Origin: Sminthopsis crassicaudata
Taxonomy: Eukaryota
Length of the DNA: 64,000 nt
Direction: 5' to 3'
NCBI RefSeq assembly: GCF_048593235.1
Contig: NC_133618.1
Span: 498,499,675-498,563,674 of the forward strand
The notes under the pieces were generated by a model, which made no database searches, had not been told where the DNA came from, and saw only the letters and a list, made by a program, of their open reading frames with translations. This document shows, piece by piece, positions 13,467-60,642 of this stretch (the stretch's first letter is position 1; every line of letters begins with the position of its first letter). A program made the position numbers and the translations under genes.

Positions 13467-13623
13467 NNNNNNNNNNNNNNNNNNNNNNNNNNNNNNNNNN
13501 NNNNNNNNNNNNNNNNNNNNNNNNNNNNNNNNNNNNNNNNNNNNNNNNNNNNNNNNNNNNNNNNNNNNNNNNNNNNNNNNNNNNNNNNNNNNNNNNNNNN
13601 NNNNNNNNNNNNNNNNNNNNNNN
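13467..13623. other. Assembly gap (157 N) inside the BBLN intron
   Basis: Run of N. Confidence 0.99.
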
Positions 13624-15388: not shown

Positions 15389-15612
15389 AATATGCAGCCA
15401 TTAACTCCATGCTGGACCAGATCAATACTTGCTTGGATCATCTGGAGGAGAAGAATGACCATCTTCACGCCCGCCTCCAAGAGCTGCTAGAATCCAACCG
15501 GCAAACAAGAGTGGAGTTCCAGCAGCAGCAGCAGGAGCAGCAGCAGCAGCAGCAGGAGCAGCAGCAGCAGCAGCTCCGTGAGGGTCCGCCTGCCGCTCAG
15601 CCTCACTCATAG
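15389..15612 (+). CDS. BBLN: BBLN coding exon 2 with stop
   Basis: cttctcctctcag|AA acceptor. (E)YAAINSMLDQINTCLDHLEEKNDHLHARLQELLESNRQTRVEF + Q5EQ6EQ5 + LREGPPAAQPHS*. 79+224 = 303 nt, 100 aa. Confidence 0.95.
15520..15573 (+). repeat. Coding (CAG)5 GAG (CAG)6 GAG (CAG)5 trinucleotide repeat
   Basis: Read directly; in frame in BBLN exon 2. Confidence 0.97.
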
Positions 15613-16750: not shown

Positions 16751-17077
16751 CTATCTTGGCTTGTGACGAGCAGAACGGCGGCAGGGCTCAGGGGCCGACC
16801 CTCTACCTTTGGCTGTCGTGACCACCTCCTCCAGCTTCGTGGTGCCGGACTTCTCCCCACCCCTGGCTTCAGTGGGGGTCTGGGCCCCATCTGGATTGTC
16901 AGCATCATCATGGGTGTCGGTGCCCCCTGACTTACACTCAGCTCCTAGAAACTGGGCTGGCTCCTCCTGTTGCTCTGAACCTGGGGCTCTTGTCCCTTCC
17001 CCTGTCAGGGTGCTGAGAAGCTCAGGTTTTAATTTGGACTCTAGGGCTGGCCCAGGGTTCCTGGCTGCTTTGTATCT
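16751..17077 (-). CDS. CIZ1: CIZ1 last coding exon (equivalent of human exon 17), 108 aa + TAG
   Basis: tctctcttcctag| acceptor; RYKAARNPGP...EPCRRSARHKPR*, compared with human KYKAAKNPSP...PRRSTRLKT; 327 nt. Confidence 0.85.
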   Translation of the reverse strand, partial: RYKAARNPGPALESKLKPELLSTLTGEGTRAPGSEQQEEPAQFLGAECKSGGTDTHDDADNPDGAQTPTEARGGEKSGTTKLEEVVTTAKGRGSAPEPCRRSARHKPR

Positions 17078-18385
17078 CTAGGAAGAGAGAAATGGGCATT
17101 ATTATTAGGCTGAGCCATTCTTTCCTATGTGGGACATCTGGAAGCTTTGAGTTTCTACCTTTGGACCTCAAGGACAGAGAGAAGGTAGAGACAGCTGTGG
17201 AGAGAGATAGAAACCTGTCTTTTGGGCCTGATTTGACCTCAGACATGGCATGTGAACCTCGCTTACTCATTTTAACTTTGGGGAGCCTCAGGTGTCCCAT
17301 TCCTATCTCCTAGACATCCATAGGCTAAGTTGTTGGGGTACCATAGTCACTTCTAGGGAATGAAAGGATCGCAGGTTCATACATACAGAGCCCAAGAATG
17401 TGGAGCTAGTGTTGGGCTTGGAAGTCAGAAAGATTAATCTGAATCTTGCCCCCAGCACTTACTGAGCTGTGTTATCCTGGACAAGTCAGTCCTGATCTTC
17501 AGTTTACTTATGGCAACAAAAGTATCTACCTCAAACAGCTATGGTAAGGATCAAATAAAATAACGTGAAAGTACTTGGCAAACTTCATAGCAGCATATGA
17601 AATACTAGCCATCTTCATTCAAAGCCTACCTTCATACCAGTGAGGAAAGAGAGGCATAGAGACCAAAAGCTCCCCGTGACCAAGTCCAGTTTTAGGCAGC
17701 TGTCACCTAGGCCTGGGACCAAAAGCCATCTAGCACCAAAGGCCAGGTGGATCAGAGAAAAGGGGGTAACTTGCTTGTCCAGAATACTCTGTTGCTGGAT
17801 TTGATGGACTAGACTAAACTGCATTAAGGCGATGAAGCTGTTGGCTATAGGCCCTCCTTTCCACTGTTCACCTCTCTACTCTGATCTAGAAAATGAGGAA
17901 ATTTTGGCAAACCAGGTAGAAATCTCCCTTCTGCCAATGTCCCCAGAATCATAGGGCTCCAGTCCTTGGGTTTTTTGTTCCTCAGTTCCTGCTTAAAGCT
18001 AAAGCACCTGGGCTTAGTCCCTGTCTCATCATTTACTCAACTCCTGATGCCTTTGAAGCCAGGGCTAGCAACTAGCCACTGCAGAAGCTGGAGCAGCCCC
18101 TGTGGGGCTCATCCCTCAGTTGGTTGTCCCATGGCCAGGAGCAAAGTCTGGCACTGTTGCTGAATCTGAGGGAATGGGGTAGAATAGGGCTCAGGATGAT
18201 GAAGGTACTGGTCTGGAATAAGATCTTTGTGTGGGATCACAGGAGCCCATCCCTAATCACCAGGCCTGATAGATGGGGGTGAGAAGAAAAGAAGGCCAAA
18301 AGACATTCAAACCCAGGGGCAGGATGAAGTTGGGGAAAGGCAGGAGGGGGAGAGGATTGTCTGGGCAGCTAGTAGAGGCTCTAAC

Positions 18386-18507
18386 CTGAACGTTCTCAAA
18401 ATGCATCAAGGACTTGCAGTGGGCAAGCCGGGCTCCTGAGCTGCTATGGTAGAATTTATGGCACAGCCGGCAAAGATACCCCACCACAGGTACCAGAAAA
18501 TCCAGGC
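18386..18507 (-). CDS. CIZ1: CIZ1 exon (16-equivalent), matrin-type zinc finger
   Basis: (G)LDFLVPVVGYLCRLCHKFYHSSSGARLAHCKSLMHFENVQ; AG/GT boundaries; 122 nt. Confidence 0.95.
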
Positions 18508-18986
18508 CTGCAAAAGAGGGGGTATGGGAAGCAACACTGACTCTGCTCAGTGAGATCAGTGTTTCCTCCCCTGTTCCACAACGGTCAGTCTGTCTCTGGG
18601 CATCCTGTGCGAGTGGTGGCTGGGAAGGGAGGGGTCTCCCAATGTGCTTCAAACATCCCAGGGGTGTAAGATGACAGCATACAGGAGAGGATCAAAGAAA
18701 GCTAGACAGGTCACTTTCAGTCTTCCTGAACCAGCAGAAGTGACCTAGAGATTTGGGCTTGGCCACATTGGGGAAACCTGAAAAATCTCTGCATTTGAGT
18801 GAGAAGGGCTGACATTTGGCTTGAAGATCAGTGCTTTCCCACAGACAATACGGTACGCTCGGCTCCCAGAACTTCACCCAGGCTCATACTTTACTTTCCA
18901 GAACAAAGCCCAGAGGGCAGGCCTGGCTCATGGACCTGCTAAGCTGAGAGCAGAAGCTCACTATTGGCACTGGGAGAATGACTTAC

Positions 18987-19056
18987 CATATGTCTTGTCA
19001 GGAGAATACTCCTCCAGGCCTTTCCAGTCATCTGCAGACTCTTCCTTTGGTCCCAC
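18987..19056 (-). CDS. CIZ1: CIZ1 exon (15-equivalent)
   Basis: VGPKEESADDWKGLEEYSPDKTY(G), compared with human VRSRDISREEWKGSETYSPNTAYG; GTAAGT donor; 70 nt. Confidence 0.92.
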
Positions 19057-19818
19057 CTGGCAAAAATGTTTGAGTTGTAAGGGGGTGAAACCTGCCTTAG
19101 CTGGATCCCATTCACCAGTGCTCAAACTAGACCCCATTAGTCTTTAGATTTTTCTTAATCTGCACCCTGGGCCTTTGACTAAATTGATAAGCTCAGTAGC
19201 CCTTCCTTTTGCACCCGGTGATTTTTTGGGAGAGAAGGAGATGGGAAGAAGAAAAGTCAAATTTGGGTGACAGGGCATGTGTAAACACTAGGAGTTACAA
19301 TGGGGTCCCTGAAGTGTGGGTAAGAGAAAATTCACAGGGTTGCCATAGGTGAAAAGCCATCCTCTCCATCCTACCTGCTCCTTGATACTACACAGCAACC
19401 CCCTTTTCTGGGTGCTTCCATTTATCTGCATTTATCTCTACTTCAGAGGCACTCAAGCTCCTTCCTTTCAAAATAACAGCACTCTAAATTAGAGCTGAGA
19501 AAAACTTCCGATGTCACATGTAAAACAAAACTTAAACTGGGTTGTGAAATGACCTATTATCAGGAATTGTCTGATCTGTATTACTATTTTATATACCCAA
19601 GATCATGAAAAAAAAAATTTTCAAGTAAAAAGAGGTCTTAAGTGAAAAATGTGTAAGAAACCCTGCTCCATAGTCCACTACCCTTCTCATCCCCATTCCA
19701 CAGATAAAGAAAGGGAAGGTAAGGGCCTTGAAATGAGATGCCTGCCTAAGATCACATAGGTAGGAAGTGGTGGAGATTTGGATCCATATGCCCACCCTCT
19801 GGACACAACCTTGGGTAC

Positions 19819-19986
19819 CTGCTTGGTCTCCTCGCTCTCTCCAACTGCCTCGCTGCCCTCATCCTCTTCTGCATCTTCTTCCTCATCCTCTTCCTCCTCA
19901 TCCTCCTCAAAACAACCTACTGCATCCACTGTGATGAGTTCTTCTGCCTCCTCAGGACTTCCTGGCTCTTTCTCCCCAAGCCGTGC
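19819..19986 (-). CDS. CIZ1: CIZ1 exon (14-equivalent), acidic domain
   Basis: ARLGEKEPGSPEEAEELITVDAVGCFEEDEEEEDEEED...ETKQ; weak CAG|GTACCC donor; 168 nt. Confidence 0.9.
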
Positions 19987-20113
19987 CTGTCAGAAAGGAC
20001 AAGGGAGCCCTTCAGCTCTTGAGGACCCAGTACTGCTACCCCCAGCTCAACAGAAGAACACCAGTGAGTGGCCCCATCACAGGAAACAAAGAGGGGCTCT
20101 ATCCCTTTCTTAC

Positions 20114-20227
20114 CTCCTTGGCTTTTTGCTTGTGCTCCGGGGATTTCATATGCTCCACAAACTTTCGGGGGGTCTTAAAATGTCGGCTACAAGCAGTACA
20201 AAAAGGTCGGAGGGAGTGTTTGGCCAG
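20114..20227 (-). CDS. CIZ1: CIZ1 exon (13-equivalent), C2H2 zinc finger
   Basis: LAKHSLRPFCTACSRHFKTPRKFVEHMKSPEHKQKAKE; 114 nt. Confidence 0.95.
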
Positions 20228-20803
20228 CTAGGAGGGGAAAAGTAGAGGCCCTTTAATATCTCAGGCTATGAGAGGATTGATCCTTTAGCCTAAGCCTTGT
20301 CCCTCCAAGTCTACCCACACTGGTACCCGCAATCCTCTCAGCTGTTTCTTTCCTTCTTCCAAATATGTGGTCCTAGGGAGACTGCCCAAACTTAGCAGCA
20401 AGAGATTCAGATGCACATACTGTGCATCAAACTAAGCTCTTTTCATGCATTTAGACACTAAAACCTATACTTTCCACCAAGGAGACAGCCAATAAACACT
20501 ACTCAAACCTAGGACTGAATTTGGTCAGAAGGAGGGCACACAGGGTAAGGGGGAGAAAAATCCCTGAAGCAGAGACTCGAGCAACAAAGAACAAGAGACA
20601 CTGAGGTTAAAGGAATAAAGCAACTAAAACCAGCAGTGGCCCAGAGGAGTAATGGGGAGCCATCCATCTCCTCTGACAAGTGGGAGGACTCTCTTCCCCT
20701 TGCCACCTCCCCACTCCAGGCCAAGCCTGCACAGTATACAGCAGCAGTGTGCATCTGAGCCAGGCTGGCGTCTTCTTGGCAGCAGCCTCCAGAGGCCCTC
20801 TAC

Positions 20804-20891
20804 CTTATGTTCCTGGGTCCTGCGATGCTTTATCAGATCCCCCAGGAAATGGGTCTGGCAGGTATTGCACCACCGCTGGGACTGGGTTTCC
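20804..20891 (-). CDS. CIZ1: CIZ1 exon (12-equivalent), zinc finger
   Basis: ETQSQRWCNTCQTHFLGDLIKHRRTQEHK; 88 nt. Confidence 0.95.
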
Positions 20892-21471
20892 CTGAAAAGG
20901 CAAAGGCGAGTTCAGACCCAAGACAGGGTCTGACAAGACCGGCCAGGGCACTCCCCCCTTCTCGGAGTTCCCTGGCTGCCTCAGTCCCAGACCAGCTCTT
21001 TCCCCTCTCCCCTGGAAAGCAGCTTGACACTGCCTACTCCGTGTGAAACTATAAAGGCTGAGAAGGGGTCGCCATTGAGGTCTATGAATATAGTTGAGAG
21101 TAGCACTAGCATGGGAATGCTCAACAGATCCCCAGATGTCAGGGGGAGGTTGACTTAGCTGCTCCTTGGAGCTTGCTTCCTCCTCTGTGAAACTAGGGGA
21201 CTGATCTCCAAGGTCCTCCCATTGCTGGCCCAGAAGTCTAAACCAAAGGACTTGGGATCTAGTCCAACCTCATTTGACAGAAGAGGAAACTGAGGTCTCC
21301 AGAGGTGAAGTGACAAATGACTTGCTCAGAGTCAGACAGACGCACTGAAGGGGAGGAGGTCCTGGAGGGCTGGCCCTGCCTTTCTGCCTCACCTCCAATG
21401 CTTGGGCTTCTGGTTGCCTGGGACTGAACCCCGTCTCCTTCAGGAGCCTACCACAGCTGCCCTGCTCTTAC

Positions 21472-21602
21472 CCATCTCGCTCCGCAAGGGCACCCTGTTC
21501 CCGAGTCGTGGGCAGCAAAGACAGGAGGCAGGCATTACTCATGTGCTGAATCTCCCCAAGCCGCTGCTGATGCTGGAGCCCAGCCATATGGGCCTGGAAG
21601 TT
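21472..21602 (-). CDS. CIZ1: CIZ1 exon (11-equivalent)
   Basis: NFQAHMAGLQHQQRLGEIQHMSNACLLSLLPTTREQGALAERD(G); 131 nt. Confidence 0.95.
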
Positions 21603-22601: not shown

Positions 22602-22784
22602 CTGCTGGTTGAAGCAGTTGACCTTGCAGATGTAACAGAAGAACTTGAGTCCAGGCTCTGGGCTGGAGGCGGGAGTGCCACTGTCACCCAGCCGGGGTCC
22701 AGGCTTTGAGGCTGTCGTGCTGATGGCTCGGCTCTCGCTGCTCTGCTGGATTGTCACCTTCAGAGAGCTCCCTGAGCTCACCAT
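22602..22784 (-). CDS. CIZ1: CIZ1 exon (10-equivalent)
   Basis: MVSSGSSLKVTIQQSSESRAIST...LKFFCYICKVNCFNQQ; 183 nt. Confidence 0.95.
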
Positions 22785-25099
22785 CTGGACATGAGAATCA
22801 CCGAGTGCAAAAACACAAGGGAAGAACTGAGTCCCAGAGAAGGCAGCTTGCCTGAGGTCACATACAGACCTAGTGGCCAAACTGGTATTTGAAAGCCAGT
22901 TGGAGGAAACAGAAAGAGCAAGAATACCTTGGCTGGAGAAAAAGTACATGGTTCCCCCCTCCCAAGCCTAGTCTCCTGTACCTAGTAGCAAGTCCCCCAA
23001 ATCTCATCCCCCCCATCATCCTAGGCATTTTCCTTGCTCATTTAGATAGTAGTGGTTATATGGGGAGAACTAGTTTGGGATTCAGCAACATGTCCTAGTC
23101 CTAGATCTGTCACTGACGCCCCAGTAGAGATCCCCCCTTACCACACCCAAGTATTGCCAAGCAACACAAAACAAAGCCACAGTGGTTATGTTTTAAAATG
23201 TCTGTTTGCAGCTCTCCCCCCAGTGACAGGAGGCACACTTCCCCTTCTGAAGTCCTGACTGGGCTCTAAGGCAGGTGTCTCTCTCTTCCCTGACAATCTC
23301 AGCCATCCTCAGCTCCTGCCTGTCTCTCCCTATTCACATCCAAGCGGTTGGCAAGGTTGTTAATTCCACCTTTACAAAACTCTAGCTCAGATGCTCCACC
23401 ATCCCCTCTGACCTGGCCCAGCCCATTATAGGAAACTCCTAATCCATCTCTCTGCTTCCAATCCATTCTCCACACAACTGCAGCAAGAAAAAAACGATGC
23501 AATGACACTCCCAAGGTCTCTCAATAATTTTTGACATGAGAGAGGCACAGGACCGCCCGCCATGGTATGCCCTCATCAAAGATGAGGTATTCTATAAAAA
23601 ATGCAAAATTTGATTAGCTCAAACTCTAGATGCACACGATTAGAGAATCCACCCCAAATGTTCATAGGGACTGTTGGTGTCTGACCTGTGGCAGAGGACT
23701 CTGAGCTCATATTGGTCTGATCAGCCACAGTAAGATGTGCTCTAACTTGACTCTAACAGGGATATCATTTTGGTTCTCTTTGAGAATGAAGAACAATAAT
23801 CATCCAACCAACCAGCCAAAATTGGTCTGAAAAACAGAGCTGTGATCTCCTACTGGCTCCTTAAGGCCTCTAGGATAAAATATAATCTCCTTTATTTGGC
23901 TTTTAAAATTCTGGCTCCAGCTTATCTTTCCAGACTTATAGCACATTACTCTTTCACATATCCTGCCCAAATGGCCTAGTTCCTGACTTTTTGTGCCCCC
24001 AAACATAAAATTCCACTCCCAATCTACAGGCTTTATACAGGCTTTACACTCCCCACCATTTCTCCCCATTCCTCTATTACCTCCTCTAGACCAGCTAGGT
24101 AGCACAATGGATTAAGCTCTGGGCTTGGAGTCAGGAAGACCCGAGTTCCACTCAGTGCTTCAGCCACTTAACCTCCGATCTCTTAACTGTAAAATGGGGA
24201 TAACAGCCCCTACTTCTCAGGGTTGTTATGAGAACCAGATTTGTAAAGCTTTAGCACAGTGTCTGGCACCTAACATGTACTTAATAGTTCTTTCCTTTTT
24301 TCCTCCCCCCATGTCTGTGATGCCCTCCCTGCCTCCTCATCTCTAGCAGTCATAATATCTAGTTCTTTTGTCTTTCAAAGCATACTTTTCCCCTCCTTCT
24401 GGGTTGCTAGTACCTCCTTTTTACCATTTTGTGATTCCTTCTCTGTTTTGTTTCTCTTCAATAGAAAGTACACTTCTTGAGGGCAGGGATGATTCTACTT
24501 TTGTCTGCCCCCAGCACATAGCACAATGCCGTGACATAAAATAGGTTCCTAATACTGACTGGATGAATTTCGAGTCTACTCATTCAAATCATTTCCTCAT
24601 CTCCAGGACAGAATATGACTTGTCCTGCTGACTTTCACCTCTCAAGACTAATGTAAGACTCCAATAAGAAAATGGATATGAAAGGGCTTTGAACTGCTAA
24701 AAGACCAGTAGGGATGCTCAGGACTATTTATTTTTAGTCAGGAGAACAGTTGCCAGGGATTATCATCATAAAAGCATTTCTAGCTCTTGTGGAGAAAGGT
24801 ATGGTAAAAATACCTCCCTCCCCCATCCCTCACATCTGCACAGCACCACTTCCAGATGCATGATCTTATTTGAGTTACTAACACTTCAAAAGGGAAGCAG
24901 GTCAGGTTTGTTCCCATTTTATAGAAGGAAACCAAGGCTGAGAACACGAAGACAGAGAGCTAGCTCAGCTCGCCCACATGCTGGCATTCACATCCTTTCC
25001 CCCAGGCTCACCAGGATCCTGGTGATACGCCAGCCTGGAAAGCAACAGCTTGGCACCCACCCACTCTCATTTTTTCTCAGCCTGGTTCTACCCACTCAC

Positions 25100-25173
25100 C
25101 ACTTCAAGGTTTTTGGGCTCCTCTGGGACTTTCCAATCCTTGCTGGTATCTGGTGGGTCTGCTTCAGCAGCTT
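25100..25173 (-). CDS. CIZ1: CIZ1 exon (9-equivalent, divergent)
   Basis: ctgttctacttctcag| acceptor and GTG|GTGAGT donor; (Q)AAEADPPDTSKDWKVPEEPKNLEV. Phase 1 to 0 fits its neighbours; little sequence homology. Confidence 0.7.
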
Positions 25174-25965
25174 CTGAGAAGTAGAACAGTCATCATGGCA
25201 GGAAGACTGTCCTTGCCTGTGACCAGCATCCCCCTGAACACCCCCAGAAGCATGGCCACAGGCTGTTTCCCATCTCTCCCAATCCCACACTCTGAGCAAG
25301 GTCTCCTGAGAGAATGCAGGATGCAGAGAGGGGCAATGCAGCCCAAAGACTCTGAAGCTGGGAGAGGAGGGGGTCCTTCCTGGCAGCCAATAATCTGAAC
25401 ATAGATAGAGCTTGGCACCCTTCTCCAGCAGCAAGACTGTCTGAACAAGAGCTGGGAGTGTTAATGGAATCGAACTTAGCAGGAGGCGACCATGATGTGT
25501 GGCGGCCAAAAAAGTTAGCCTAATTTAAGGCTGTTTCCAGAAAGGAATCCACGGTTCAGGCCTTGAGGTATTCATCCTACTTAGCCCGCCTCCAGAAGCA
25601 CCAGATTTTAGAAAGAATAAGGTAGAGAGCATCCAGAGAAGGATAACCAGAATGGTGAAGGGACTGAAAATACTGAGCAAAGGCCTCAGAGAGGGCATGA
25701 TGGGTATCATGGGAAAGCGGCTCGCTGGACTTGAGCTAGTGGGCTCCCAGAAGCAGAACAAGCCCAGGGGAGCTTCAAAGAGATGAATTTGGGCTTCAGG
25801 TTGAAAGTTCCTGACAATTCACCATCCCCAAAATGGACCTGGCAGCCTCAGCGGGGAGCAAGTCAGACAAAGCTAGAAGGAGCACTAGTTGGAGATTCTT
25901 GTGTAGGACAGAGCTGGACCAGATGGACTCAGAGGTTATTTCAATTCAGGGATCCTGATACTCAC

Positions 25966-26024
25966 GCTCTTCTTTTTCTGTGGTCAGGCCAGTCTCCTCC
26001 TTGGAGTCTTTGGGATCTTCCACA
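25966..26024 (-). CDS. CIZ1: CIZ1 exon 8-equivalent, 59-nt micro-exon
   Basis: ctccctttcctcccag| acceptor and C|GTGAGT donor; (S)VEDPKDSKEETGLTTEKEE resembles the human exon 8 start SSEEPTEKEPP. Read-through past the donor hits TGA within 6 codons. Confidence 0.78.
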
Positions 26025-26745
26025 CTGGGAGGAAAGGGAGGACAGTGTTGGGCCCACCAGAACAAACAACTTTGGGGGGGGAGAGAAGGGCACTAGGCTC
26101 AAGATTTCCAGGGTCCTGGAGAGATCACCAGTCAATTCCTTATCCTTGGTAGAAGACCAAATCAACATTATATCTAAGAAAATCAGTCTTCCAGAAGAGA
26201 AAAGTTTACACTTTCCTCTGGCCACCCATCTTGGAATTTATAAATAGCCTTGTTAAAAAAAATCCTCTTCATAGCCAATCTAAATTCTTCCATTGCTATT
26301 CGGAAATTGATTTTTTCAAAAATTCACTTTATTCTTATTTTAGCCCACCATGGAATCCTAGCCTATGCCATTTCAGAGCAGTACCCTTTTTATTTATTCA
26401 ATGTCAGAGGTCTGAGAAATAAAGGATCAGTTCGGTTCAGGGTTCCTTTTCCTAAAAATTCTGAACTTTCTTCTATCCCATCTTAAATCCTAAAGTCAAC
26501 CCTTTTTTGCCCCAATATTTGAGCTATGAGAGGCTGCACTGACCCCTCTTGGCCACTAGGCGGGAGCTAGACACCAGCTCAAAGAAGCCAAGGCCATATC
26601 ATAACCCGACCAAAAGCAGGTTGCCAGCTCTCTTGTTCTGGTCCAAAGGGATAGGACTAGGCTGAATACCCCTCCCTTATTATTCCAATCCCATCTGCCC
26701 TCGGGAGAAGAGAGCAGTCAATCTGATGATTTGAGCATGTGTTAC

Positions 26746-26821
26746 CTCTTGAGTCTCTTGGCCAGAGGCTCTGAGCTACCATCATCACTGAGATCATGGG
26801 GAGTCTGGGGAGTCTGTGGAT
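26746..26821 (-). CDS. CIZ1: CIZ1 exon (7-equivalent)
   Basis: (D)PQTPQTPHDLSDDGSSEPLAKRLK(S), compared with human ..EASELPAKRLRS; 76 nt. Confidence 0.85.

Positions 26822-27027: not shown

Positions 27028-27030
<3 letters not shown>

Positions 27031-27072
<42 letters not shown>
27031..27072 (+). repeat. (AC)21 microsatellite
   Basis: Read directly. Confidence 0.95.
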
Positions 27073-27074
<2 letters not shown>

Positions 27075-27180
27075 AAGCAGAAGGATGTTGTGAAGGACAC
27101 AAAGACAAGTAGGGAAGTGTTGGCATTCCCATAATAAATTCAATATATACATTAAAAATTTTTTTCTTAAAAAAATACAA

Positions 27181-27320
27181 GGGGTAGCTAGATGGTGCAG
27201 TGGATAGAGCACCAGCCCTTAAGTCAGGACCTGAGTTCAAATATGACCTCAGGCACTTAACACTTTCTAGCTGTGTGATTCTGGGCAAGTCACTTAACCC
27301 CAACAGCCTCAACAAAAAAA
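27181..27320 (+). mobile_element. Short CORE-SINE (WSINE1-like)
   Basis: ggggtagctagatggtgcagtggatagagc...gggcaagtcacttaacccc plus A-rich tail. Confidence 0.85.
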
Positions 27321-27947: not shown

Positions 27948-28083
27948 CTTCTGGCAAGGTCGCCTGGGAGTCAGCCTCCTCCTGGGAGGACTCTGGAACA
28001 TCTATCTTCTCATCCTCACTGGGTGTCTGTGATGAGGAGCCCAACTCTGAATCTTTCTTCTGGTCAGGACCCTTCGGGGATTC
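27948..28083 (-). CDS. CIZ1: CIZ1 exon (6-equivalent)
   Basis: ESPKGPDQKKDSELGSSSQTPSEDEKIDVPESSQEEADSQATLPE contains SSSQT as in human DSSSQT; G|GTAAGG donor; 136 nt. Confidence 0.87.
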
Positions 28084-29325: not shown

Positions 29326-29483
29326 CTTTCGATAGCCCCGGTTCTGCCTCTGGAAAGGAAGCCCTGGGAAGCCTATGCAGGCGGGTTTGAGTGAGACACT
29401 GACGGGTGGAGGGCCTAGGAGGGAGTGTCGAGTAGCCTGGGGGAAGAAATGCTGAAGGCCAGGAGCGGTCAAGTTGAATCTGC
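29326..29483 (-). CDS. CIZ1: CIZ1 exon (5-equivalent); alternative start at 29486 via NAGNAG
   Basis: (G)RFNLTAPGLQHFFPQATRHSLLGPPPVSVSLKP...RK, compared with human LQQFFPQATRQSLLGPPPVGV; AAG|GTAAGC donor. Confidence 0.92.
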
Positions 29484-29727
29484 CTGCTGACAGAAAGGAA
29501 TCACAACCATAATTTAGGGAGACCAGGGTCTAAGAATCAGGCTCCCTGAAGGATGGGGATCCAGGACAGGCTTTTACTAGAGGCCAAGAATAAATCACTC
29601 AGATTCAATTCCTGTCCCCTGCGTGAGTCCCTCTTGTGACCAGGGCAAAAATAGTACACTACAAGTTTCTTGAAGGGTGAAAAAATAAGGAAAGAAAGAT
29701 GAAAAAGACTGAGGAGGCACTTTAAGG

Positions 29728-29897
29728 CAAAACTGCTTAAACTATGGTTCACGACCCCACATGGGGTTTTGTAACTGAATGTGGGGGTTGTGAAATTATG
29801 ATTTATGATCAGTAAATGTATGATTTGTATATCTATTATATCTAGCCATGTCTTGGGCAAAAAGGGATCACCAGTGGAAAAGGTTTAAGAAGCCCTA
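29728..29897. mobile_element. hAT/Charlie-type MITE (old)
   Basis: Degenerate terminal inverted repeats (..gcttaaact / aggtttaagaagccct) and a typical MER-like interior. Confidence 0.5.
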
Positions 29898-32083
29898 CTC
29901 TCAAGAATACAAGTAAAACCTGCATGGTGGTGCTGAGAGATCTGTGGATTGGCTCTACAACTGTAACTCTGCTAGGAAAGAAGCCACCCCTTCCACTTGC
30001 TGTCCAGTCATCTTTCTCTTAGCTATCCTAGGATAGCTCCCAAAAGCAGTTACTAAGTGACTTAACCCTGTGCCTGGAACAAAAATATTAAAAAGTCTTG
30101 CACACTAGGAGCTTTCTATCCCTAGTGATACTGAGGGAGTTACTTGCTACAGAGGCTTGTACATAGCAGTCTCATAAGAGAGATTTGTTGAAAGAATGAG
30201 ACATTCTTGTCTCCTCTATCACAAAAACACTCTGTGATCTTGTGGAAGTCACTCCCCATCTCAGAGGCCCAGTAACTATTTCTATAAAATGAGGAGGCTG
30301 AGGCAGATGATTCCGTCCAGCTCTACCATTCTTAGGGTGCAGAATTCCATGCGTGGGTTAGAAATTCCAGCTGGTCAGACACAGGCTTACCTTCCTCCGC
30401 CTTTTGTCACAGTCAATGGGTCACAGCTACACCCTGAATTTTTCATGCAGGTGTTGAAGTACACTAGGAACAGGTCACCCAGAGATCAACTTCTCAGATG
30501 GCAAGTTTCCTTCTCCACTCCCCTCCCACAGGCCAGAATTGATGAATGTAAGAGAAAACTGAGTATGAGGCGTAGACGCTGCTAAGCTCACTCCTAGACA
30601 GCTACTTGGATACAGCGCAGGCAGAGGATCAGGAAGACAAGAGTTCAAATTCAGTCTCAAATGCTTAACTAGTTGTGGGATACTAGGCAAATCACTTAAC
30701 TTCTGTCTGCCTCAATTTCCTCACTTGTAAAACGTGGATCATAACCTTCATTCCAGAGTTATTGTGAGGATCACATGAGATGATATTTGTAAAGGCACTC
30801 AATACTTACCTGACTGTAGCAGATATTTAATATATGCTTATTCTCTTTCTTCTCTTTCCTCTCTCCTGACTTCTCTACCCCCTGCCTCCTCCAGTTTCTG
30901 GAAGGCAACTATTAGGAGTTCTCCTATCTCAGTGAAAAGGACAGAGAGGGAAGGATAAGCAAGGCACAGGATGAGGCAACATGAGAAACAACTGACTCAA
31001 GAGTCTCTTGTTGAGTCTTGGCCAAAGGAACATTCAGTTTTTCCAAGGGATTTTGCCCTAAACGTGTTAACATACTATTAGGATCTCATGTAAATAAAAA
31101 GCTTTGCAAACTTTAATGCACTTAAAAAATGTCAATTCTTCTTGTTATATTCGTGACCAATTCAGGTCCCATGCATCTTTGCTCCTCTAGGCTCCCCCCC
31201 CCCCCCACCACACTGCTGACACTCTTCCCCTATCCTTTTTCATTTCCACTTCTGCCCAGCTATTCTTTCCTCTTAAGGGTTTTTTGTTTGTTTGTTTGTT
31301 TTTTACCCCTCTGCATTCTAGAGTTTTGTTTTTCTGTCTTTTGTTTTTCTACCACTCTTCTACCTTGTTGGATTCCATATCCCACTCACCCCAATTCCCT
31401 GCCCTAAGTTTTGGGTCCCACCAAAGCTCTCCCTGTTTCCTTCTACTTCTCTTTCTTGGACCCAGCAGTTTGCATGGGTTCAATGATGATCTCTGTACTG
31501 ATGGGTCCCAGCCCTAGTCTCCACATATTAGCACTTCTCTTTATATATATCTTTGGGCCTAATCTCTCTATCCACTGCGTCACCTAGCTGCCCCTGGGCC
31601 TAATCTCAAATCACAAATACTTTAAGGCTGTAGTGTTTTAGAGCTCTAAGAAGAAACCTTAGAGACCAATGAGTCTGACCCCTTCATTTTGCAGATAAGA
31701 AAACTAGGCTAGAGAAGTAACCTGTCCACAGTCACAAAAGAAGGCATTAAGTGGCAGAGCCAGGATTGGAACACAAACCCTTTGCCTCCAACTACAATGC
31801 TTTTTCCATGATACTATGCTATTCTAACTGGATGTCTCATGTTCCTTAGGCATCTCAAACTTGACAGGTCTAAAACAATTCTATATTCCTCTCAAACCAA
31901 CCCCTCTTCTTAACTTTCCTATTTCTGTTGATGGCAATGCCAATCCTTTCAGCCATCCAGATTTACCTTGAGGTCAACTATGAGTCTTCCCCTCTCATTG
32001 TCCAGATAGAATTCATTACCACGTCTTATCTAAGATAACCTCTTCAAATGTTTCCGTCTATAAAGTCAGCACTTAATCTAGGT

Positions 32084-32248
32084 CAGTGGTCCTCAAACTT
32101 TTTAAATACGGATGCAGTTCACTGTCTCTCAGACTGTTGGGAGGGCTGGACTATAGTAAAAACAAAACCTCACACTCTGTCTCCGCGGGCCACATAAAGC
32201 CCTCAGTGGGCCATATCTGGCCCTTGGCCAGTAGTTTGAAAACCCCTG
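32084..32248 (+). mobile_element. OC1 (OposCharlie1)-like hAT MITE, 165 bp
   Basis: TIRs CAGTGGTCCTCAAACT / AGTTTGAAAACCCCTG; interior aaacttttta..cagttcactgtc.ctcagactgttgg.agggc.ggactatagtaaaaac matches recalled OC1; flanks atctaggt / at--aggt. Confidence 0.72.
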
Positions 32249-34829
32249 ATAGGTCTTCTTAACTTCTGCTCTATATTTCAGTAGCTTCATTTGCTCTTTC
32301 TATATTCAGGTTTTATCCTTTTTCTTCTTCTCACTTTCTATTCCCCATCATGTTGCAAAGAGCTAGAAAATCTGTATTTCTAAGGCACAGTTCCAAATCT
32401 ATCACCCCCTGGTCAAAAAAGTCCATTGGTGTCTTGTTGAATTGAGAATAAAATTCAAACTCTCGCAGTTTGAAGCTAAATGCTTTTTTACAATCTAGCT
32501 TAGGTCGACCTTTCAGACTTGTTGTAGGTTCCTTCCTTTCATGCATTCTCCATTTCAGCCCATCTCATTGCCCCCTATATTGCCATTCTGTCCCCAAGAT
32601 CCCTGCCTCTGGATGGTTGTCACTCCTGATTTTCTCTTTTTAGAATATTTGGTTTCCCTTAAAGCTCAAATGTCACCCTGCCTTCTACTTCCAGCAGCTC
32701 TTCCCTGAGGGACCTACTTTTCCCAGATCCTTAGAATTCTTATTTATCAATTATGTATTTACTTTTCAATAGCAAGTTTCCTTTTTGGTTTTTTTTATCT
32801 GGTGCTTAGCAAAGTGATTGATAGGCTCTCAAGAAATGCTTTTTGACAGGAAGGCAATTAAGTGCTTACTACTCTGGGCTCTGGGCTAAGAATGAGGGAT
32901 AAAAATATAGACCCAAAAAAAAAAAAAAAAAAAAATCCCTGACTTCAAGGAGCTTACATTCTAGTGGAAGGTCACCAGAAAGCTGGGGAATGTGGAGGGG
33001 CATAGGAAGTACCTCATCTATACAGGAGGGATGGCAAAGCCCAGGTCTCTGAAAGTCCCAAGGATAGCTGAAAAGGTAAAGAAGCATAGATCAGCTCCCC
33101 CAAAGGCAGCACAATAGTAAGGGATATTGCTTGCCAAATACAGGCCGGGATTTGTGCCTTCAACAAATAAGTTCAATTGAACAATACCTTATTAAGCACC
33201 TCTATAATTCAGCCAAACTGGTCCTTTTGTTCCTCACACAAAACATTTCATTTCCCATCTCTATGCCTTTGCCTTGGTCTCTTCCCTTGTTGGAATGCAT
33301 TGCCTTCTTATTCCTGTTCCTTAAAATCTCTTGTTTCACATTTTAAAACTCATCTAAAGTAACTGCTCCTACATCTGGGGTGTTTAATGTGGGATCTCTA
33401 AATTTTGTTGATTAAATTTTTTCAGAAGTGTACTTTGATGAAATTAGTTTCCTTTGTAGTCTAAGGCATTTTATTACATTCATCTAAAAATACTTCTGAG
33501 AAGGGGACCACAGGTTTTATCTGACTGCCAAAGAGAATACATGATACACATAAAAAAGATGAAAAATTCTATTTTATTTGAAAACTTTGATTTATCCTCA
33601 TAGCTACTGACCTTCCCTAAACAAATTTACCTTACATTTATTTTGTATGTGTATGTATGTTGCTCCTTATAGAATTGCTTCTTGGAGATTGAGACTGTTT
33701 CTTTCTTGTCTTTTTATTTTTGGTGCTTGGCACATATCAAATCTTAATAAATGTTGATACAGCATTATAATAGTGCTGGGGACATACAAAATTCAAATAA
33801 GACATTCCCAAGTAGGGGAATATGGGGCATACATAGATAAAATGCAAAATAATACATAAAAGATACAATAGAGAAGTGCAAAGCTAAATGATTTGTGAGA
33901 CCCAAAGGGTAAAGGTCATTACAGAAAGAATGGCATACAAACTAAGAATTAAAGCATAAGCCCCTAGGACATCTAGCACAAGGCAAGACATAGCAGATTT
34001 TTTTCTGAGAGCTTCTTAAGTGCCAAACCTACAGGGTTTGATAATAAAAACATAAGACAACAATTTTAAAAGTACAGCCTGTTTTTGCTAGTCACTAACT
34101 CATTAAATTCGTGCACTTTCACCTATTTATCACAGTTGAAGACTTGATATCAAAGGCTTATCAAAGCACCAGACACTAACCACTAGGATTAGACCCCAAA
34201 TTCCATGCTTGAAAAACAAAATTAGATCTCCTAAAAGCCCTTCAGAAAATAACAATAATGCTAAGTTAACTGTGATATGTGAACAAATGAAATATTTCCG
34301 TGTCTTAAGAAACAAAAAATATTAAAAATATGGCAAAATATGAACATATTGCAAAAAACTAAGCAGATCCAAGAAAATAATATAAACAATGATTCCAACA
34401 ATGTAAAAGAAAAAAACAAAAAAAAAAATAATAAATCACATAACTGGAGTGATCAAGTTTGGCCCATAAGAGATAAAAATAGATACCTCCCTTTGGTCAT
34501 TAGGGAGGTGAGGACTATGGATTCCCAGTGCATATCCTATCAGATTCAGTTGATGTGGTGACTTTTATGCAACTGTCTTGTTTTCTTTTATAAGCTTCTT
34601 ATTAATTTTTTTGTTGCCAAAAATGCTTTCTGGGGTAGGGATAGGGAAGGATATATTTGGAAATGAAGGTCATGTAAAAACAAAAGAGAGAAATAATAAA
34701 AATTTTAAGGATAAAATATACTCGCATTTACATAGTACTTTAAGGTTTGCAAAGAACTTCCCTTATAGTAACACTATGAAGAAGATATTAACTTCATTTT
34801 ACAAAGGAAAAAAATTATAGAAATAAATC

Positions 34830-38498: not shown

Positions 38499-38614
38499 CT
38501 TGCATGTGTTGCATCAGCAGGGCTCTCTGCAGCATGGGGTTCGAGTTGAGAAGGTTGGCCTGGCCTGTGGCTCGGAGGTTCAAGATCTGCTGCTGCTGCT
38601 GTGGTGATAGCCCC
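38499..38614 (-). CDS. CIZ1: CIZ1 exon (3-equivalent)
   Basis: GLSPQQQQQILNLRATGQANLLNSNPMLQRALLMQHMQ(G), compared with human GLPPQQPQQPLLNL...MLQRALLLQQLQG; 116 nt. Confidence 0.93.
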
Positions 38615-39099: not shown

Positions 39100-41450
39100 C
39101 AAGATGGGTCAGGGGTTTTTCAGGATAGCCCCGCCCCCTTGGGCCCGGCCAAGCCAGCCATCCCCAGCCTCAAGTGGTGGCGCTCACCGGCCTGCGGAAG
39201 GCGGCGGCGGATGCTGCTGCTGCTGCTGCTGGATGAGCTGTTGGATCTGCAGCAGTTGCTGCTGGAACTGGTGCTGTTGGCTGAACATCGCTGCAGGCCG
39301 AAAGAGGGGGGGGAAGCATCAGAACCAAGGGAGCAAGATGGGGGCTAGTATCCAGCCTAGCCCCCCCTTCAGCTTTCTGCAAAAGTACACGCCCATTCCC
39401 TATTTCCCCCGTTCCTCTTCCCTCCAGCCTCAGAAACGCTTCCCCAAATTCTTCTAACCCCTCCCCAAACTCACCATTCCTGTTCCCCCAAATTCCCAGG
39501 GGTCTAGAACCCAGGCTCCAACTTCTCAGATCCCAACTCCGAACTCTCCACCGCCCAATCCCGCCCCAGCTCAGCTCCTGGCAGCAACCCCGCCCCCACC
39601 TGCTTCCCATGGCCTCCTCCTCTCCCTCGAAGGGACAGAAACGAGCGGAAAAGGGCGAGCCCCCAGGGGCCAGCGTCCCCAAATCCCGGGCTCGACCTCA
39701 ATCTCGCTCCCTCGGCCCCCTCCCCCTCCAGGGACACACCGGCCGGGACAGCTCCCCCGCTCCGGCTCCGGGCTGCTGGGTCCTTCTCTCTCTCTCTCAG
39801 CGCCCTATTCTCTTTCCTTTCTCTCACCCTCCCTAAGGGACAACCCGCAGCGGGGGAGAAGGGGGCGGGACGACGGGGGAGGGGGACCGAGCCGCTCCTT
39901 TTGTAGGCCCGGAGGTCCTATGGCCGCCGCGGACCCTCCCCTTCCCCTCTCCCGCCCGAGAGCTCTAGGGGAGGTTGTGTGGGGAGGCGGCCGCCTCACC
40001 TACCTCCCCGGCTCCGAGAGGGTTTTCCTGCATGCTCCAGGGAGCTGGGGGGAGGGGAGGGAACGCGAAAGGAAATTAATTAAGTCAGGCCCCTAAACTC
40101 TGATCTCCGATCTACTGGCTCTCCAGATCTCTCCAGAAGCCCGTTTCCCCACCCCCACGCCCCCTCCTTGATTTGCCTCAGGGAAGGAGGAGGTAAGAGC
40201 CATCTGCTCTGGGGAGGTGCGAGAGAAGAGGGGAGGAGTAAATGGCGGAGGGGGAGCAGCAGATGGCCACGGGAGGCTCGTTCCGCTTTTCCAGAAAGCT
40301 CTCGGTACCTGGGGCAGATGGCCACGGTCTGGCCGGGGAGGAGGCAGGGCCAAGTCACGGGCCGCTCGGCCCCGCCCCGCCCCACCCTCCCGGTGACCTG
40401 CCGCGGTCAGGTGGCCCCAGGAGAAGCGCAGACCGGCTGACCGACCCGCCTCCCGTCCCCGCCCCACGCGCACGCGCAAGCACGCGCGCGCGCACGTCCG
40501 TGTCTGAGTGGGTCTCCACGTCTTTGTCCGTCTCTGCCTGACTGTCACCAGGGTCACTTTCTCTGCCGCTCTGTCTCTGTCTCTCGCCGTCCCACGCACG
40601 CGCACACACACATGCAGTCTGTCTCTTCTGCCCATCTCCGTCTCTCTGTCTCTGTTACAAGCACGGGACTGGGAGTCAGTCTCTGTTCCTGCCCGTCTCT
40701 GTCTTTTTCTCTCACCCTCACGCGCGCTCTCACATTCTGAATCTGCTTCTCTATCTGCCCCACTCACGCAGACGGAGGCAGAGAGACTGTCTCTCTGAGT
40801 GTCCCCCACGAATAATCACTCTCCGTCTCTGTCTCTGCCATCTTTCTGTGTCTCCTTGTCTTTCTCTCACACACGTGGTCACGGGCACATTTCGCTCCGA
40901 TTTCCCCTAGGGCCTCTCTAAGGGGATCTCATGCAGGCCCATCATTGCTCCTCACTACACTTTCCAGCCAGCTACCTTGCTGAGCCCGAAAATGTTACGC
41001 GTCTCCGCGTGCCTTTCTTTGCACAGGCTGTTAAGCGTCCCCTCCCTCATTCCGGAGCTCAGCTCTCACGCTATCTGTCTCTCCGACTCCCTCCCCCACC
41101 CGCAGGGAGTGTCCCCTGGAATTACTTTGTATCTCTTTGCTGCGTAGTTTAGGTTTGTTTTTCTGTGAGTGTGGGAATTTTTTTCCTTCCAAGGCTAGAA
41201 CTGCTTTCCTCTTTGTCTCAGTTATACTCGAGGCCTGGCACAGTTGTTTGTCAAACAGTAATTGATTTCTGGTTGAATGAATAAATATGATATGGAAAGA
41301 AGAGAATTGGAAGGTAAACCGGCTCCAGCTATTCACCTCTGCAAGAGTCACAAGCTCGTCAGTAAAACAAGCGTTAGCCCAAAGGACCTCGGACGGTTCT
41401 TCCACATCTAAGTCCTATGATCCCACCTGTTTCTGTAGGTGGCGAAACCG
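39100..41450 (-). promoter_or_regulatory. CIZ1 CpG island / non-coding exon 1 region
   Basis: CpG-rich; tandem minus-strand donors GAG|GTAGGT (40003) and GTGAGG (39999) are candidate ends of a 5' UTR exon. Confidence 0.65.
39188..39288 (-). CDS. CIZ1: CIZ1 first coding exon (exon 2; acceptor at 39290)
   Basis: MFSQQHQFQQQLLQIQQLIQQQQQQHPPPPSAG(R), compared with human MFSQQQQ...LLQLQQLLQQSPPQ; CG|GTGAGC donor. Confidence 0.93.
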
Positions 41451-59425: not shown

Positions 59426-60138
59426 AAAGGACTTGGAACAGATGTCCTCTGGGGCATCTTCAGCTCTAAGTCTATGCTCCTATGATGAGAAGATGGAGTG
59501 AATATGAGTAAGAAATCGGCATGCACAGTAAGTATTTTCTAGATTTTTAACTGGAAGAAGGGCTTGGGAATATGGAAAATTTCTCGTTTTATTTTCTGTG
59601 TGGTTTACCAGTCCTCCCCTGCCATTTTCTATCCATTAGCAGCCCCCGCAGATTCACTTATTCATTCATCTCCTGTGCCTAGTTCTGTGAGGGAGGCAAA
59701 GACGAATAAAATGTGGTCCCTGCTCTCAAGGAGCTCAGTCTAGTGAGGAAGAAGAGAGAGAGATAACTGACAGCTTCGGGAGGAAGATGCATGTCAGACG
59801 AGTGCAGAGATGCCTCAGAGAACGACAGCTCCCGGGGGCTGGAGAAGCCGGCAAACCTTCGCACACGGGGTGGGATCTGAGCTGATTTAAATGGTGGAAG
59901 CCTAACTGATGGGCATGGGGGTGAGGGAGGAGACGTTTAAGGTCGGTCGGGGTAGAAAGGTGTAGCACAGGACAGGGGTGTTGTGACGGGCCGCAGATTA
60001 TATAAACCAGAATCGAAGGCTTAGAGGAAGTGTCCTCTTTTCGCGCAGGCTTGGCTCTTGATGCTGGGTGTTGGCCCAGAACCCAGGTAAATAGATGGCT
60101 TTCATCGACCACGCTCTCGAAAACTACAATTCCCGTGA

Positions 60139-60642
<504 letters not shown>

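What the first reader, a model, noticed from the sequence alone, without database searches (positions are those of the whole stretch)
25100..26821. Marsupial CIZ1 lacks the large Q-rich exon 8 (second prion-like domain): only a 59-nt micro-exon
Seen: the exon ending LAKRLK(S) joins in frame to a 59-nt exon (25966-26024, strong AG and GTGAGT sites, stop 6 codons past the donor), then a 74-nt exon, then the GSSLKVTI exon. No Q-rich ORF exists in 22785-26745. The whole CDS sums to 640 aa. Established (recalled): human CIZ1 is 898 aa; its exon 8 is a long QVQPQ-repeat region (PLD2); the CIZ1 prion-like domains drive assembly on Xist repeat E at the inactive X; marsupials have no Xist and use RSX. 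Inference: PLD2 is a eutherian exon extension that may have co-evolved with Xist, and this locus may show the pre-Xist state. Marsupial CIZ1 may then either not coat the Xi or engage RSX differently.
Basis: partly seen in the sequence, partly recalled or inferred. Interest (0 to 1): 0.82.

Follow-up and report, generated by a model that had tools for sequence, protein, structure and literature searches.

The report
Dunnart CIZ1 lacks eutherian Q-rich domain
The marsupial copy of the nuclear-matrix gene CIZ1 has a 59-base exon where placental mammals have a ~620-base glutamine-rich exon (the domain that helps CIZ1 assemble on the Xist-coated inactive X); platypus, echidna, reptiles, birds and amphibians share the short form, so the domain is a placental-mammal gain, not a marsupial loss.

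Summary
On the minus strand, 15 coding exons with canonical AG/GT sites splice into a 1935-nt CDS. Its 644-aa product is identical to RefSeq XP_074149863.1, CIZ1 of Sminthopsis crassicaudata. The interval holds no gap, no Q-rich ORF and no relic of the eutherian sequence.

The dugong and platypus loci have matching exons in the same phases: 59/56/623 nt and 74/71/122 nt (dunnart/platypus/dugong). The distance from the NLS motif to zinc finger 1 is:
- 53-55 aa in 65 of 66 marsupial isoforms (11 species) and 53 aa in both monotremes;
- 53-113 aa in 90 other vertebrates;
- 225-334 aa in 67 measured eutherian proteins; all four superorders carry the Q-rich exon.

PLD2 is therefore a stem-eutherian gain of about 188 codons in a pre-existing exon. 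An intronless opossum cDNA-like contig shows the same exon joins.

This architecture is already in public annotation. I found no paper in the searched library stating that PLD2 is eutherian-only. Co-evolution with Xist fits published data (PLD2 gives repeat-E specificity; CIZ1 is absent from the opossum RSX interactome) but is untested. Read-level junction evidence could not be obtained.

The parts
39188..39288 (-). CIZ1 coding exon 1 (ATG; polyQ/L tract = PLD1 equivalent, human exon 2)
   Evidence: Spliced model reproduces XP_074149863.1 exactly. 29 Q/N in the first 80 aa.
38499..38614 (-). CIZ1 coding exon 2
   Evidence: 116 nt in dunnart, platypus and dugong alike
29326..29486 (-). CIZ1 coding exon 3 (QHFFPQATRHSLLGPPPV block)
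   Evidence: The eutherian 72-nt exon that precedes it in dugong has no counterpart in the 9-kb intron.
27948..28083 (-). CIZ1 coding exon 4 (acidic/Ser-rich)
26746..26821 (-). CIZ1 coding exon 5, ends ...EPLAKRLK (homologue of human exon 7, which carries the N-terminal NLS)
   Evidence: PMC8927971 places a conserved NLS in constitutive exon 7. Equating that NLS with the KRLK motif is my inference.
25966..26024 (-). 59-nt micro-exon, (S)VEDPKDSKEETGLTTEKEE; homologue of eutherian exon 8 (623 nt in dugong, 56 nt in platypus), start phase 2
   Evidence: The peptide is conserved in 11 marsupial species.
25100..25173 (-). 74-nt exon, (Q)AAEADPPDTSKDWKVPEEPKNLEV; homologue of eutherian exon 9 (122 nt in dugong, 71 nt in platypus), start phase 1; CAG|AAG tandem acceptor
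   Evidence: One-residue isoform pairs (EQAAEA / EPAEA) in other marsupials fit use of the AAG acceptor 3 nt downstream.
22602..22784 (-). CIZ1 coding exon 8, MVSSGSSLKVTI... to first C2H2 zinc finger (FFCYICK)
   Evidence: Pfam zf-met at residues 289-313 at E 9e-4, 19.9 bits, just under the curated cutoff of 21.2
16751..21602 (-). CIZ1 coding exons 9-15 (21602-21472, 20891-20804, 20227-20114, 19986-19810, 19056-18987, 18507-18386, 17077-16751): CIZ1-like and JAZ zinc fingers, acidic domain, Matrin-type finger, C-terminal tail and stop
   Evidence: PF23330 and PF12171 above their cut-offs; Matrin-type exon 66-90% identical to vertebrate CIZ1 proteins
22785..26745 (-). Interval in which a PLD2-type exon would have to lie: two introns plus the two short exons, no Q-rich coding potential

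Best explanation
The window carries the CIZ1 orthologue of the fat-tailed dunnart (15 coding exons, 644 aa), flanked by BBLN and DNM1.

Shown: its 59-nt coding exon 6 is the true homologue of eutherian 'exon 8'. It has the same position, the same start phase, and the same neighbouring exons.

Shown: the short, acidic linker between the NLS-like KRLK motif and zinc finger 1 is about 55 aa, 20-22% D/E and 3-6% Q. It is the ancestral vertebrate condition, shared by monotremes, sauropsids, amphibians and lungfish. On the eutherian stem, about 188 codons were added inside this exon. They consist of a unique stretch followed by a Q-x-Q-x array with period 2 and DNA periods 6/12/24. Sixteen codons were also added to the next exon. 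This created the second prion-like domain (PLD2), which every eutherian superorder retains.

Inferred: the dunnart protein is a constitutive natural 'delta-PLD2' CIZ1. It keeps the PLD1-like polyQ head, the zinc fingers, the acidic domain and the Matrin-type finger. It should therefore keep the ancestral nuclear-matrix and replication roles and general RNA binding.

Inferred: by analogy with mouse delta-PLD2 constructs, it should lack the repeat-E-type selectivity and the capacity to nucleate new Xi assemblies (about 0.5). A causal link between the PLD2 gain and the origin of Xist is only a hypothesis (about 0.25).
For: - Gene model: one solution with canonical sites reproduces XP_074149863.1 exactly.
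- Exon homology: coding-exon lengths are 101,116,161,136,76,59,74,183... in dunnart; 107,116,167,133,67,56,71,177... in platypus; 158,116,72,230,94,109,623,122,198... in dugong. Phases are identical.
- Spacing from KRLK to SLKVTI: eutherians 225-334 (n=67 of the 123 retrieved proteins matched the motif pair), marsupials 53-55 (65 of 66 isoforms), monotremes 53, other vertebrates 53-113 (n=90).
- Q density upstream of zinc finger 1: 19-25 Q per 60 aa in 123 eutherian proteins, against 1-11 in marsupials.
- A search with the PLD2 region alone returned only eutherians in its top 120 hits. These included Loxodonta, Orycteropus, Choloepus and Dasypus.
- Linker alignment and composition.
- Q periodicity: z about +6 at spacing 2 and 4, with QQ depleted. 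TRF arrays of period 6/12/24.
- Spliced-transcript-derived evidence: L003 is a 2,027-nt intronless contig, 99.8% identical in protein to Monodelphis isoform X9. It aligns collinearly to all 15 window exons, with joins at the predicted boundaries.
- Function of PLD2 in mouse: (PMC8927971).
- CIZ1 is not among the opossum RSX interactors: (PMC11112854).
Against: - No read-level RNA evidence from the dunnart itself.
- L003 is from an opossum-like source. It could be a retrocopy or cDNA contamination rather than a bona fide transcript record.
- PLAAC was not run. 'No PLD2' rests on Q/N density proxies.
- The mouse PLD2 deletion removes only part of exon 8, so extrapolating to a protein with no insert at all is indirect.
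- Absence from the RSX ChIRP-MS list is weak evidence, because SPEN, MATR3 and CELF1 were also absent.
- Drosophila Ciz1 also has two prion-like domains flanking its NLS. Such domains therefore arise repeatedly, and their presence need not relate to Xist.
Confidence: 0.87

Rival explanations
1. PLD2 was gained in stem eutherians for reasons unrelated to Xist. Candidates are neutral slippage-driven growth of a disordered linker, or selection on replication, cell-cycle or general nuclear-assembly roles. Its present role at the Xi would then be a later co-option, and the marsupial state would say nothing specific about RSX.
For: - The gain is one of several eutherian expansions of the N-terminal half: polyQ +19 codons, a new 72-nt exon, exon 4 +23 codons, exon 9 +16 codons.
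- PLD2 is the fastest-evolving part of eutherian CIZ1: 57-73% identity to dugong, against 75-94% for the zinc-finger half.
- CIZ1 forms smaller assemblies in both sexes and has replication roles (abstracts).
- Drosophila Ciz1 independently has two prion-like domains.
- In wild-type mouse cells PLD2 is dispensable for joining existing Xi assemblies.
Against: - PLD2 is retained, with conserved length and composition, in all four eutherian superorders.
- In mouse it is required for de novo Xi assembly and gives selectivity for repeat E.
Confidence: 0.55
2. Marsupial-lineage loss: the therian ancestor had a long Q-rich exon 8, and marsupials deleted it.
For: None found. This reading was only a priori possible from one marsupial genome.
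Against: - Platypus and echidna have a 53-aa spacing, with 56- and 71-nt exons in platypus.
- Gecko, chicken, turtle, crocodile, tuatara, salamander, frog and lungfish all have a short acidic linker.
- The dunnart introns hold no relic of the eutherian sequence.
Confidence: 0.02
3. Annotation or assembly artefact: a long Q-rich exon exists in the dunnart but is collapsed in the assembly, or is missed because it is used only in unsampled transcripts.
For: No dunnart reads could be laid on the locus. Repeat-rich exons are prone to collapse.
Against: - The interval has no gap and no Q-rich frame.
- Eleven independently assembled marsupial genomes and two monotremes give the same spacing.
- None of the 66 annotated marsupial isoforms has an insert. 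The single outlier, an old opossum model with 71-aa spacing, contains non-Q intron-like residues.
- The intronless opossum contig L003 joins the exons directly.
Confidence: 0.03

Closest known systems
Eutherian full-length CIZ1 (mouse NP_082688.1, 845 aa; human 898 aa; here dugong KAM9207567.1, 868 aa)
   Same: Orthologous gene in conserved synteny (BBLN-CIZ1-DNM1). It shares the polyQ head (PLD1), the KRLK/KRLR motif, three C2H2/JAZ-type fingers including the CIZ1-specific PF23330, the acidic domain and the Matrin-type finger. C-terminal exon lengths are identical (88, 114, 70, 122 nt).
   Different: The dunnart protein lacks the ~188-codon Q/P-rich insert of exon 8 (PLD2) and the 72-nt exon (human alternative exon 4). 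Its polyQ is shorter (29 against 39 Q/N per 80 aa), and its exon-9 homologue is 16 codons shorter.
Mouse splice variant CIZ1-delta-2p6p8 (ECIZ1) and engineered CIZ1-delta-PLD2 (PMC8927971)
   Same: CIZ1 without PLD2. These are the only forms for which the consequence is measured: no de novo Xi assembly in Ciz1-null cells, and loss of repeat-E selectivity in EMSA.
   Different: These forms remove only part of exon 8, by alternative splicing or deletion, in a eutherian backbone. The splice variant also lacks PLD1. The dunnart form is constitutive, keeps PLD1, and never had the insert.
Monotreme and sauropsid CIZ1 (platypus XP_028919216.1, 642 aa; gecko XP_077163227.1, 717 aa)
   Same: Same architecture and the same 15 coding exons (platypus). 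The linker is short and acidic, with the conserved ...SK(D/E)(R/W)(K/N)(F/V)(S/P)EE(P/A)K... block before zinc finger 1.
   Different: Only lineage-level sequence divergence (about 60-68% identity).
Drosophila Ciz1 with two prion-like domains flanking the NLS (bioRxiv 10.64898/2026.06.21.733590)
   Same: PrLD - NLS - PrLD layout, resembling the eutherian PLD1 - NLS - PLD2.
   Different: It is very distant. Its second PrLD is 33 aa and dispensable in the wing assay. All sampled non-eutherian vertebrates lack a second domain, so the resemblance to eutherians is best read as convergent.

Membership tests
CIZ1 (CDKN1A-interacting zinc finger protein 1) orthologue | CIZ1-like C2H2 zinc finger (Pfam PF23330) followed by a JAZ-type dsRNA-binding finger (PF12171) | tested here: met
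   PF23330 scored 58.7 bits (cut-off 27) at residues 351-378. PF12171 scored 28.8 bits (cut-off 22.6) at residues 384-408. Both were scored on the protein identical to the window's product.
CIZ1 (CDKN1A-interacting zinc finger protein 1) orthologue | C-terminal Matrin-type zinc finger exon | tested here: met
   The translation of window 18386-18508 matches named vertebrate CIZ1 proteins at 66-90% identity. E-values go down to 2e-17 against 1.8 billion proteins.
CIZ1 (CDKN1A-interacting zinc finger protein 1) orthologue | N-terminal polyQ/L head (PLD1) | tested here: met
   The protein starts MFSQQHQFQQQLLQIQQL..., with 29 Q/N in the first 80 aa, against 39 in dugong and 38 in platypus. PLAAC itself was not run.
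CIZ1 (CDKN1A-interacting zinc finger protein 1) orthologue | Orthology and synteny | tested here: met
   The spliced product is 100% identical to RefSeq CIZ1 of Sminthopsis crassicaudata. BBLN lies downstream on the + strand, and the DNM1 first coding exon lies upstream on the + strand.
Eutherian-type, Xist-assembling CIZ1 (two prion-like domains) | Q-rich PLD2 encoded by a long exon 8 between the NLS exon and zinc finger 1 | tested here: not met
   The homologous exon is 59 nt and the spacing is 55 aa, against 225-334 aa in eutherians. At most 6 Q per 60 aa upstream of zinc finger 1, against 10-18 (within 120 aa) and 19-25 (within 260 aa) in eutherians.
Eutherian-type, Xist-assembling CIZ1 (two prion-like domains) | lncRNA-dependent accumulation on the inactive X | not testable with these tools
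   The only indirect evidence is that CIZ1 is absent from the opossum RSX ChIRP-MS interactome (PMC11112854).

The most novel reading that the evidence does not exclude
PLD2 arose in the eutherian stem lineage as the adaptor that turned an ancestral, promiscuous RNA-binding nuclear-matrix protein into a Xist repeat-E-selective assembly factor. On this reading marsupial CIZ1, a natural delta-PLD2, does not form RSX-dependent Xi assemblies. Grafting the eutherian exon-8 insert into dunnart or platypus CIZ1 would then be sufficient to give de novo Xist-dependent assembly in Ciz1-null mouse cells. That would be a dated, testable case of a protein domain co-originating with its lncRNA partner.
Probability: 0.25. 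Interest if true: 0.75.

Novelty: already known. Interest (0 to 1): 0.5.

Why it matters
The gene and its short product are already in RefSeq for 11 marsupials and both monotremes, so the sequence itself is not new.

What the comparison adds is a dated evolutionary statement. The CIZ1 domain that gives selectivity for Xist repeat E, and that is needed to nucleate new Xi assemblies in mouse, exists only in eutherians. Eutherians are also the only clade with Xist. I found no paper in the searched library that says this; the PLD papers compare only mouse and human.

If the link is causal, marsupial and monotreme CIZ1 are ready-made natural controls and chimera backbones. They could be used to dissect how a disordered domain creates lncRNA specificity, and to ask whether RSX uses CIZ1 at all. 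If the link is not causal, this is an ordinary example of lineage-specific growth of a disordered linker.

Tried and rejected
1. RNA-seq junction test. The look-up of sequencing runs listed 22 runs. No read-level evidence was obtained.
2. Relic search. blastn and tblastn of the dugong 623-nt exon and its peptide against the window gave only a CA-repeat and chance hits.
3. Echidna XP_038601609.1 is 845 aa, which looked like a possible long monotreme form. The excess is a 202-aa N-terminal extension upstream of MFTQQQQ, and the linker spacing is 53 aa.
4. P0020 (708 aa, unnamed) has a 187-aa spacing. The extra residues are Q-poor, low-quality sequence that looks like intron read-through, in a sauropsid-like model. 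It is not a PLD2.
5. An old opossum model, P0282, has a 71-aa spacing from 16 non-Q residues. Current opossum isoforms have 54-55 aa.
6. Longer marsupial isoforms (681-713 aa) differ by alternative 5' exons or upstream ATGs. In Dromiciops X1 the difference is an extended acceptor upstream of the NLS exon. None differs in the linker.
7. The eutherian 72-nt exon was sought in the 9-kb dunnart intron 2. No hit was found inside the gene.
8. Literature searches for CIZ1 with marsupial, eutherian, platypus, or glutamine-rich plus orthologs found no statement on the phylogenetic distribution of PLD2. The library holds open-access papers and preprints only; Sunwoo et al. 2017 could not be read.

Full report
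**What is in the window**

On the minus strand an exon ends ...EPLAKRLK at 26746, with a split AG|T Ser codon. A 59-nt exon at 26024-25966 has a pyrimidine-rich AG acceptor and a GTGAGT donor, and read-through of the donor meets TGA after six codons. A 74-nt exon lies at 25173-25100. The GSSLKVTI exon lies at 22784-22602.

The only assembly gap in the window is 13467-13623. The only Q-rich frames are the CIZ1 start exon and the neighbouring BBLN gene.

I enumerated AG/GT(GC) boundaries around the exact-match pieces. One solution emerged: 15 coding exons, all with AG acceptors and GT donors, giving 1935 nt. Its 644-aa product is identical to RefSeq XP_074149863.1, the cip1-interacting zinc finger protein of Sminthopsis crassicaudata. 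Pfam finds the CIZ1-specific finger PF23330 and the JAZ-type finger above their cut-offs. The DNM1 first coding exon lies upstream on the other strand and BBLN lies downstream.

**Is a Q-rich exon hidden in the interval?**

No. Across 22785-26745, the highest Q count per 30 aa in any stop-free stretch on either strand is 6. The dugong exon-8 peptide reaches 13. blastn and tblastn with that exon find nothing in the CIZ1 introns.

**Exon homology**

I fetched the genomic loci of dugong CIZ1 (L001) and platypus CIZ1 (L002) and solved their gene models in the same way. Coding-exon lengths are:

- dunnart: 101, 116, 161, 136, 76, 59, 74, 183, 131, 88, 114, 177, 70, 122, 327
- platypus: 107, 116, 167, 133, 67, 56, 71, 177, 131, 88, 114, 174, 70, 122, 336
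- dugong: 158, 116, 72, 230, 94, 109, 623, 122, 198, 125, 88, 114, 150, 70, 122, 216

The 59/56/623-nt exons all start in phase 2, and each length leaves remainder 2 on division by 3. The 74/71/122-nt exons all start in phase 1. Exon 1 is untranslated in mouse and human, so the 623-nt dugong exon is the 'exon 8' that carries PLD2. The extra 72-nt dugong exon corresponds to the alternatively spliced human exon 4. The dunnart micro-exon is therefore the true homologue of exon 8, not a leftover beside a missing exon.

Both ends of the exon look conserved between platypus and eutherians. It starts S-S-E-G/E... and ends ...E-x-G-G-G before the donor. This suggests the ~564 extra nucleotides sit inside the exon. 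That point rests on a few residues and is tentative.

**Phylogenetic distribution**

A search with the Matrin-type finger exon, followed by searches with gecko, dunnart and dugong proteins, gave named CIZ1 sequences from all major vertebrate groups. I measured the distance from the KRLK-type motif to the SLKVTI motif:

| Group | Spacing (aa) | n |
|---|---|---|
| Eutherians | 225-334 | 67 of the 123 retrieved proteins matched both motifs |
| Marsupials | 53-55 | 65 of 66 isoforms, 11 species |
| Platypus, echidna | 53 | 2 |
| Sauropsids, amphibians, lungfish, other fishes | 53-113 | 90 |

The marsupial species are Sminthopsis, Antechinus, Sarcophilus, Monodelphis, Gracilinanus, Vombatus, Phascolarctos, Dromiciops, Petaurus, Macrotis and Trichosurus.

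Apparent exceptions dissolve on inspection. The 845-aa echidna model only has an N-terminal extension. One old opossum model and one unnamed sauropsid-like model contain non-Q read-through residues.

Q density in the 260 aa upstream of zinc finger 1, leaving out the first 110 aa, is 19-25 per 60 aa in all 123 eutherian proteins and 1-11 in marsupials. A search with the PLD2 region alone returned only eutherians among its best 120 hits. They included Afrotheria (Loxodonta, Orycteropus, Rhynchocyon, Chrysochloris) and Xenarthra (Choloepus, Dasypus).

The short linker is acidic (20-22% D/E, 3-6% Q) and alignable from lungfish to marsupials. The eutherian insert is 17-21% Q and 13-15% P. Parsimony therefore places one gain on the eutherian stem. 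Marsupial loss is excluded.

**Nature of the insert**

In dugong the exon-8 peptide has Q at alternate positions. Q..Q spacings of 2 and 4 occur 32 times each, against about 14 in shuffles (z about 6). Adjacent QQ is depleted (2 against about 14). TRF finds arrays of period 6, 12 and 24. This is a Q-x-Q-x array, unlike the polyQ of PLD1, and it fits growth by slippage of CAG-NNN units.

The first ~50 residues of the insert are a unique sequence, well conserved across superorders. Slippage alone therefore does not explain it. I could not test a transposon or exonised-intron origin.

PLD2 is the fastest-evolving part of eutherian CIZ1, at 57-73% identity to dugong against 75-94% for the zinc-finger half. 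Its length and composition are nevertheless kept. The gain is not isolated. Eutherians also lengthened the polyQ head, acquired the 72-nt exon, and enlarged two further exons.

**Transcript-level support**

There are two indirect supports.

- All RefSeq isoforms in 11 species use these exons. They include one-residue pairs (EQAAEA / EPAEA) explained by the CAG|AAG tandem acceptor, which is also present at 25176-25171.
- L003 is a 2,027-nt contig of assembly GCA_029782595.1. It holds an intronless full-length CIZ1 ORF, 99.8% identical to Monodelphis isoform X9. It aligns collinearly to all 15 window exons, with joins at the predicted boundaries. Whether it is a retrocopy or cDNA carry-over, it derives from a spliced message without any extra exon.

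**Function and literature**

Sofi et al. 2022 (PMC8927971) show that mouse PLD1 (exon 2) and PLD2 (part of exon 8) were called by PLAAC and are alternatively spliced. In that study PLD2 is dispensable for joining existing Xi assemblies but is needed for de novo assembly in Ciz1-null cells. Its deletion removes the preference for Xist repeat E. They compare only mouse and human.

The opossum RSX interactome study states that, of SPEN, PTBP1, MATR3, CELF1 and CIZ1, only PTBP1 was recovered (PMC11112854). A preprint that used opossum and platypus CIZ1 as outgroups for selection tests does not mention the missing domain. Searches for CIZ1 with marsupial, eutherian, platypus or orthologs found no paper describing the distribution of PLD2. 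Drosophila Ciz1 has two prion-like domains around its NLS, which warns that such domains arise repeatedly.

**Verdict**

The object itself is ordinary and already annotated. The interest lies in the unreported coincidence between a eutherian-only, repeat-E-selective domain and the eutherian-only Xist. That link remains a hypothesis, and an equally plausible rival is unrelated growth of the disordered linker followed by later co-option.

Noticed in passing
L003:1-2027 (assembly GCA_029782595.1, contig JARCCX010187766.1): A 2-kb contig of a genome assembly is an intronless, full-length, open CIZ1 cDNA copy. It starts 10 nt upstream of the ATG and ends about 90 nt after the stop. Its protein is 99.8% identical to Monodelphis domestica isoform X9. 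It is either a very young retrocopy or cDNA contamination of the assembly.
   Followed up: partly
window 25170-25176 (-): There is a CAG|AAG tandem (NAGNAG) acceptor at the 74-nt exon. One-residue isoform pairs (EQAAEA / EPAEA) annotated in opossum, Gracilinanus, wombat, koala, Dromiciops and Petaurus match use of the downstream AAG.
   Followed up: partly
window 15319-15609 (+): A BBLN (C9orf16) exon carries a Q5-E-Q6-E-Q5 tract at the end of its coiled coil.
   Followed up: no
window ~60480-60645 (+), CpG-rich 60001-62000 (GC 0.67): The first coding exon of dynamin-1 ([20 protein letters not shown]...[12 protein letters not shown]) lies about 21 kb upstream of CIZ1 on the opposite strand. 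The BBLN-CIZ1-DNM1 order matches my recollection of human 9q34.11.
   Followed up: no
window 49716-50327 (+): A 203-aa ORF resembles the C-terminal part of a LINE-1 ORF2 protein. This is judged from memory and was not searched.
   Followed up: no
window ~27030-27075: A (CA)n microsatellite lies in CIZ1 intron 4. It was the only thing the dugong exon-8 DNA matched in the window. Separately, the read laying filter tripped at 27260-27301, for a reason not given.
   Followed up: no
P0349 (echidna XP_038601609.1), residues 1-202: The echidna CIZ1 model starts 202 aa upstream of the conserved MFTQQQQ start. The extension is low-complexity and rich in Ala, Pro and Cys, so it is probably translated 5' UTR rather than real protein.
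   Followed up: partly
L001 (dugong) 2880-2951 versus window 29487-38498: The eutherian 72-nt exon (human alternative exon 4) is also absent from dunnart and platypus. The parts of CIZ1 that are alternatively spliced in human and mouse (exon 4, part of exon 8) largely coincide with the eutherian-specific additions.
   Followed up: partly
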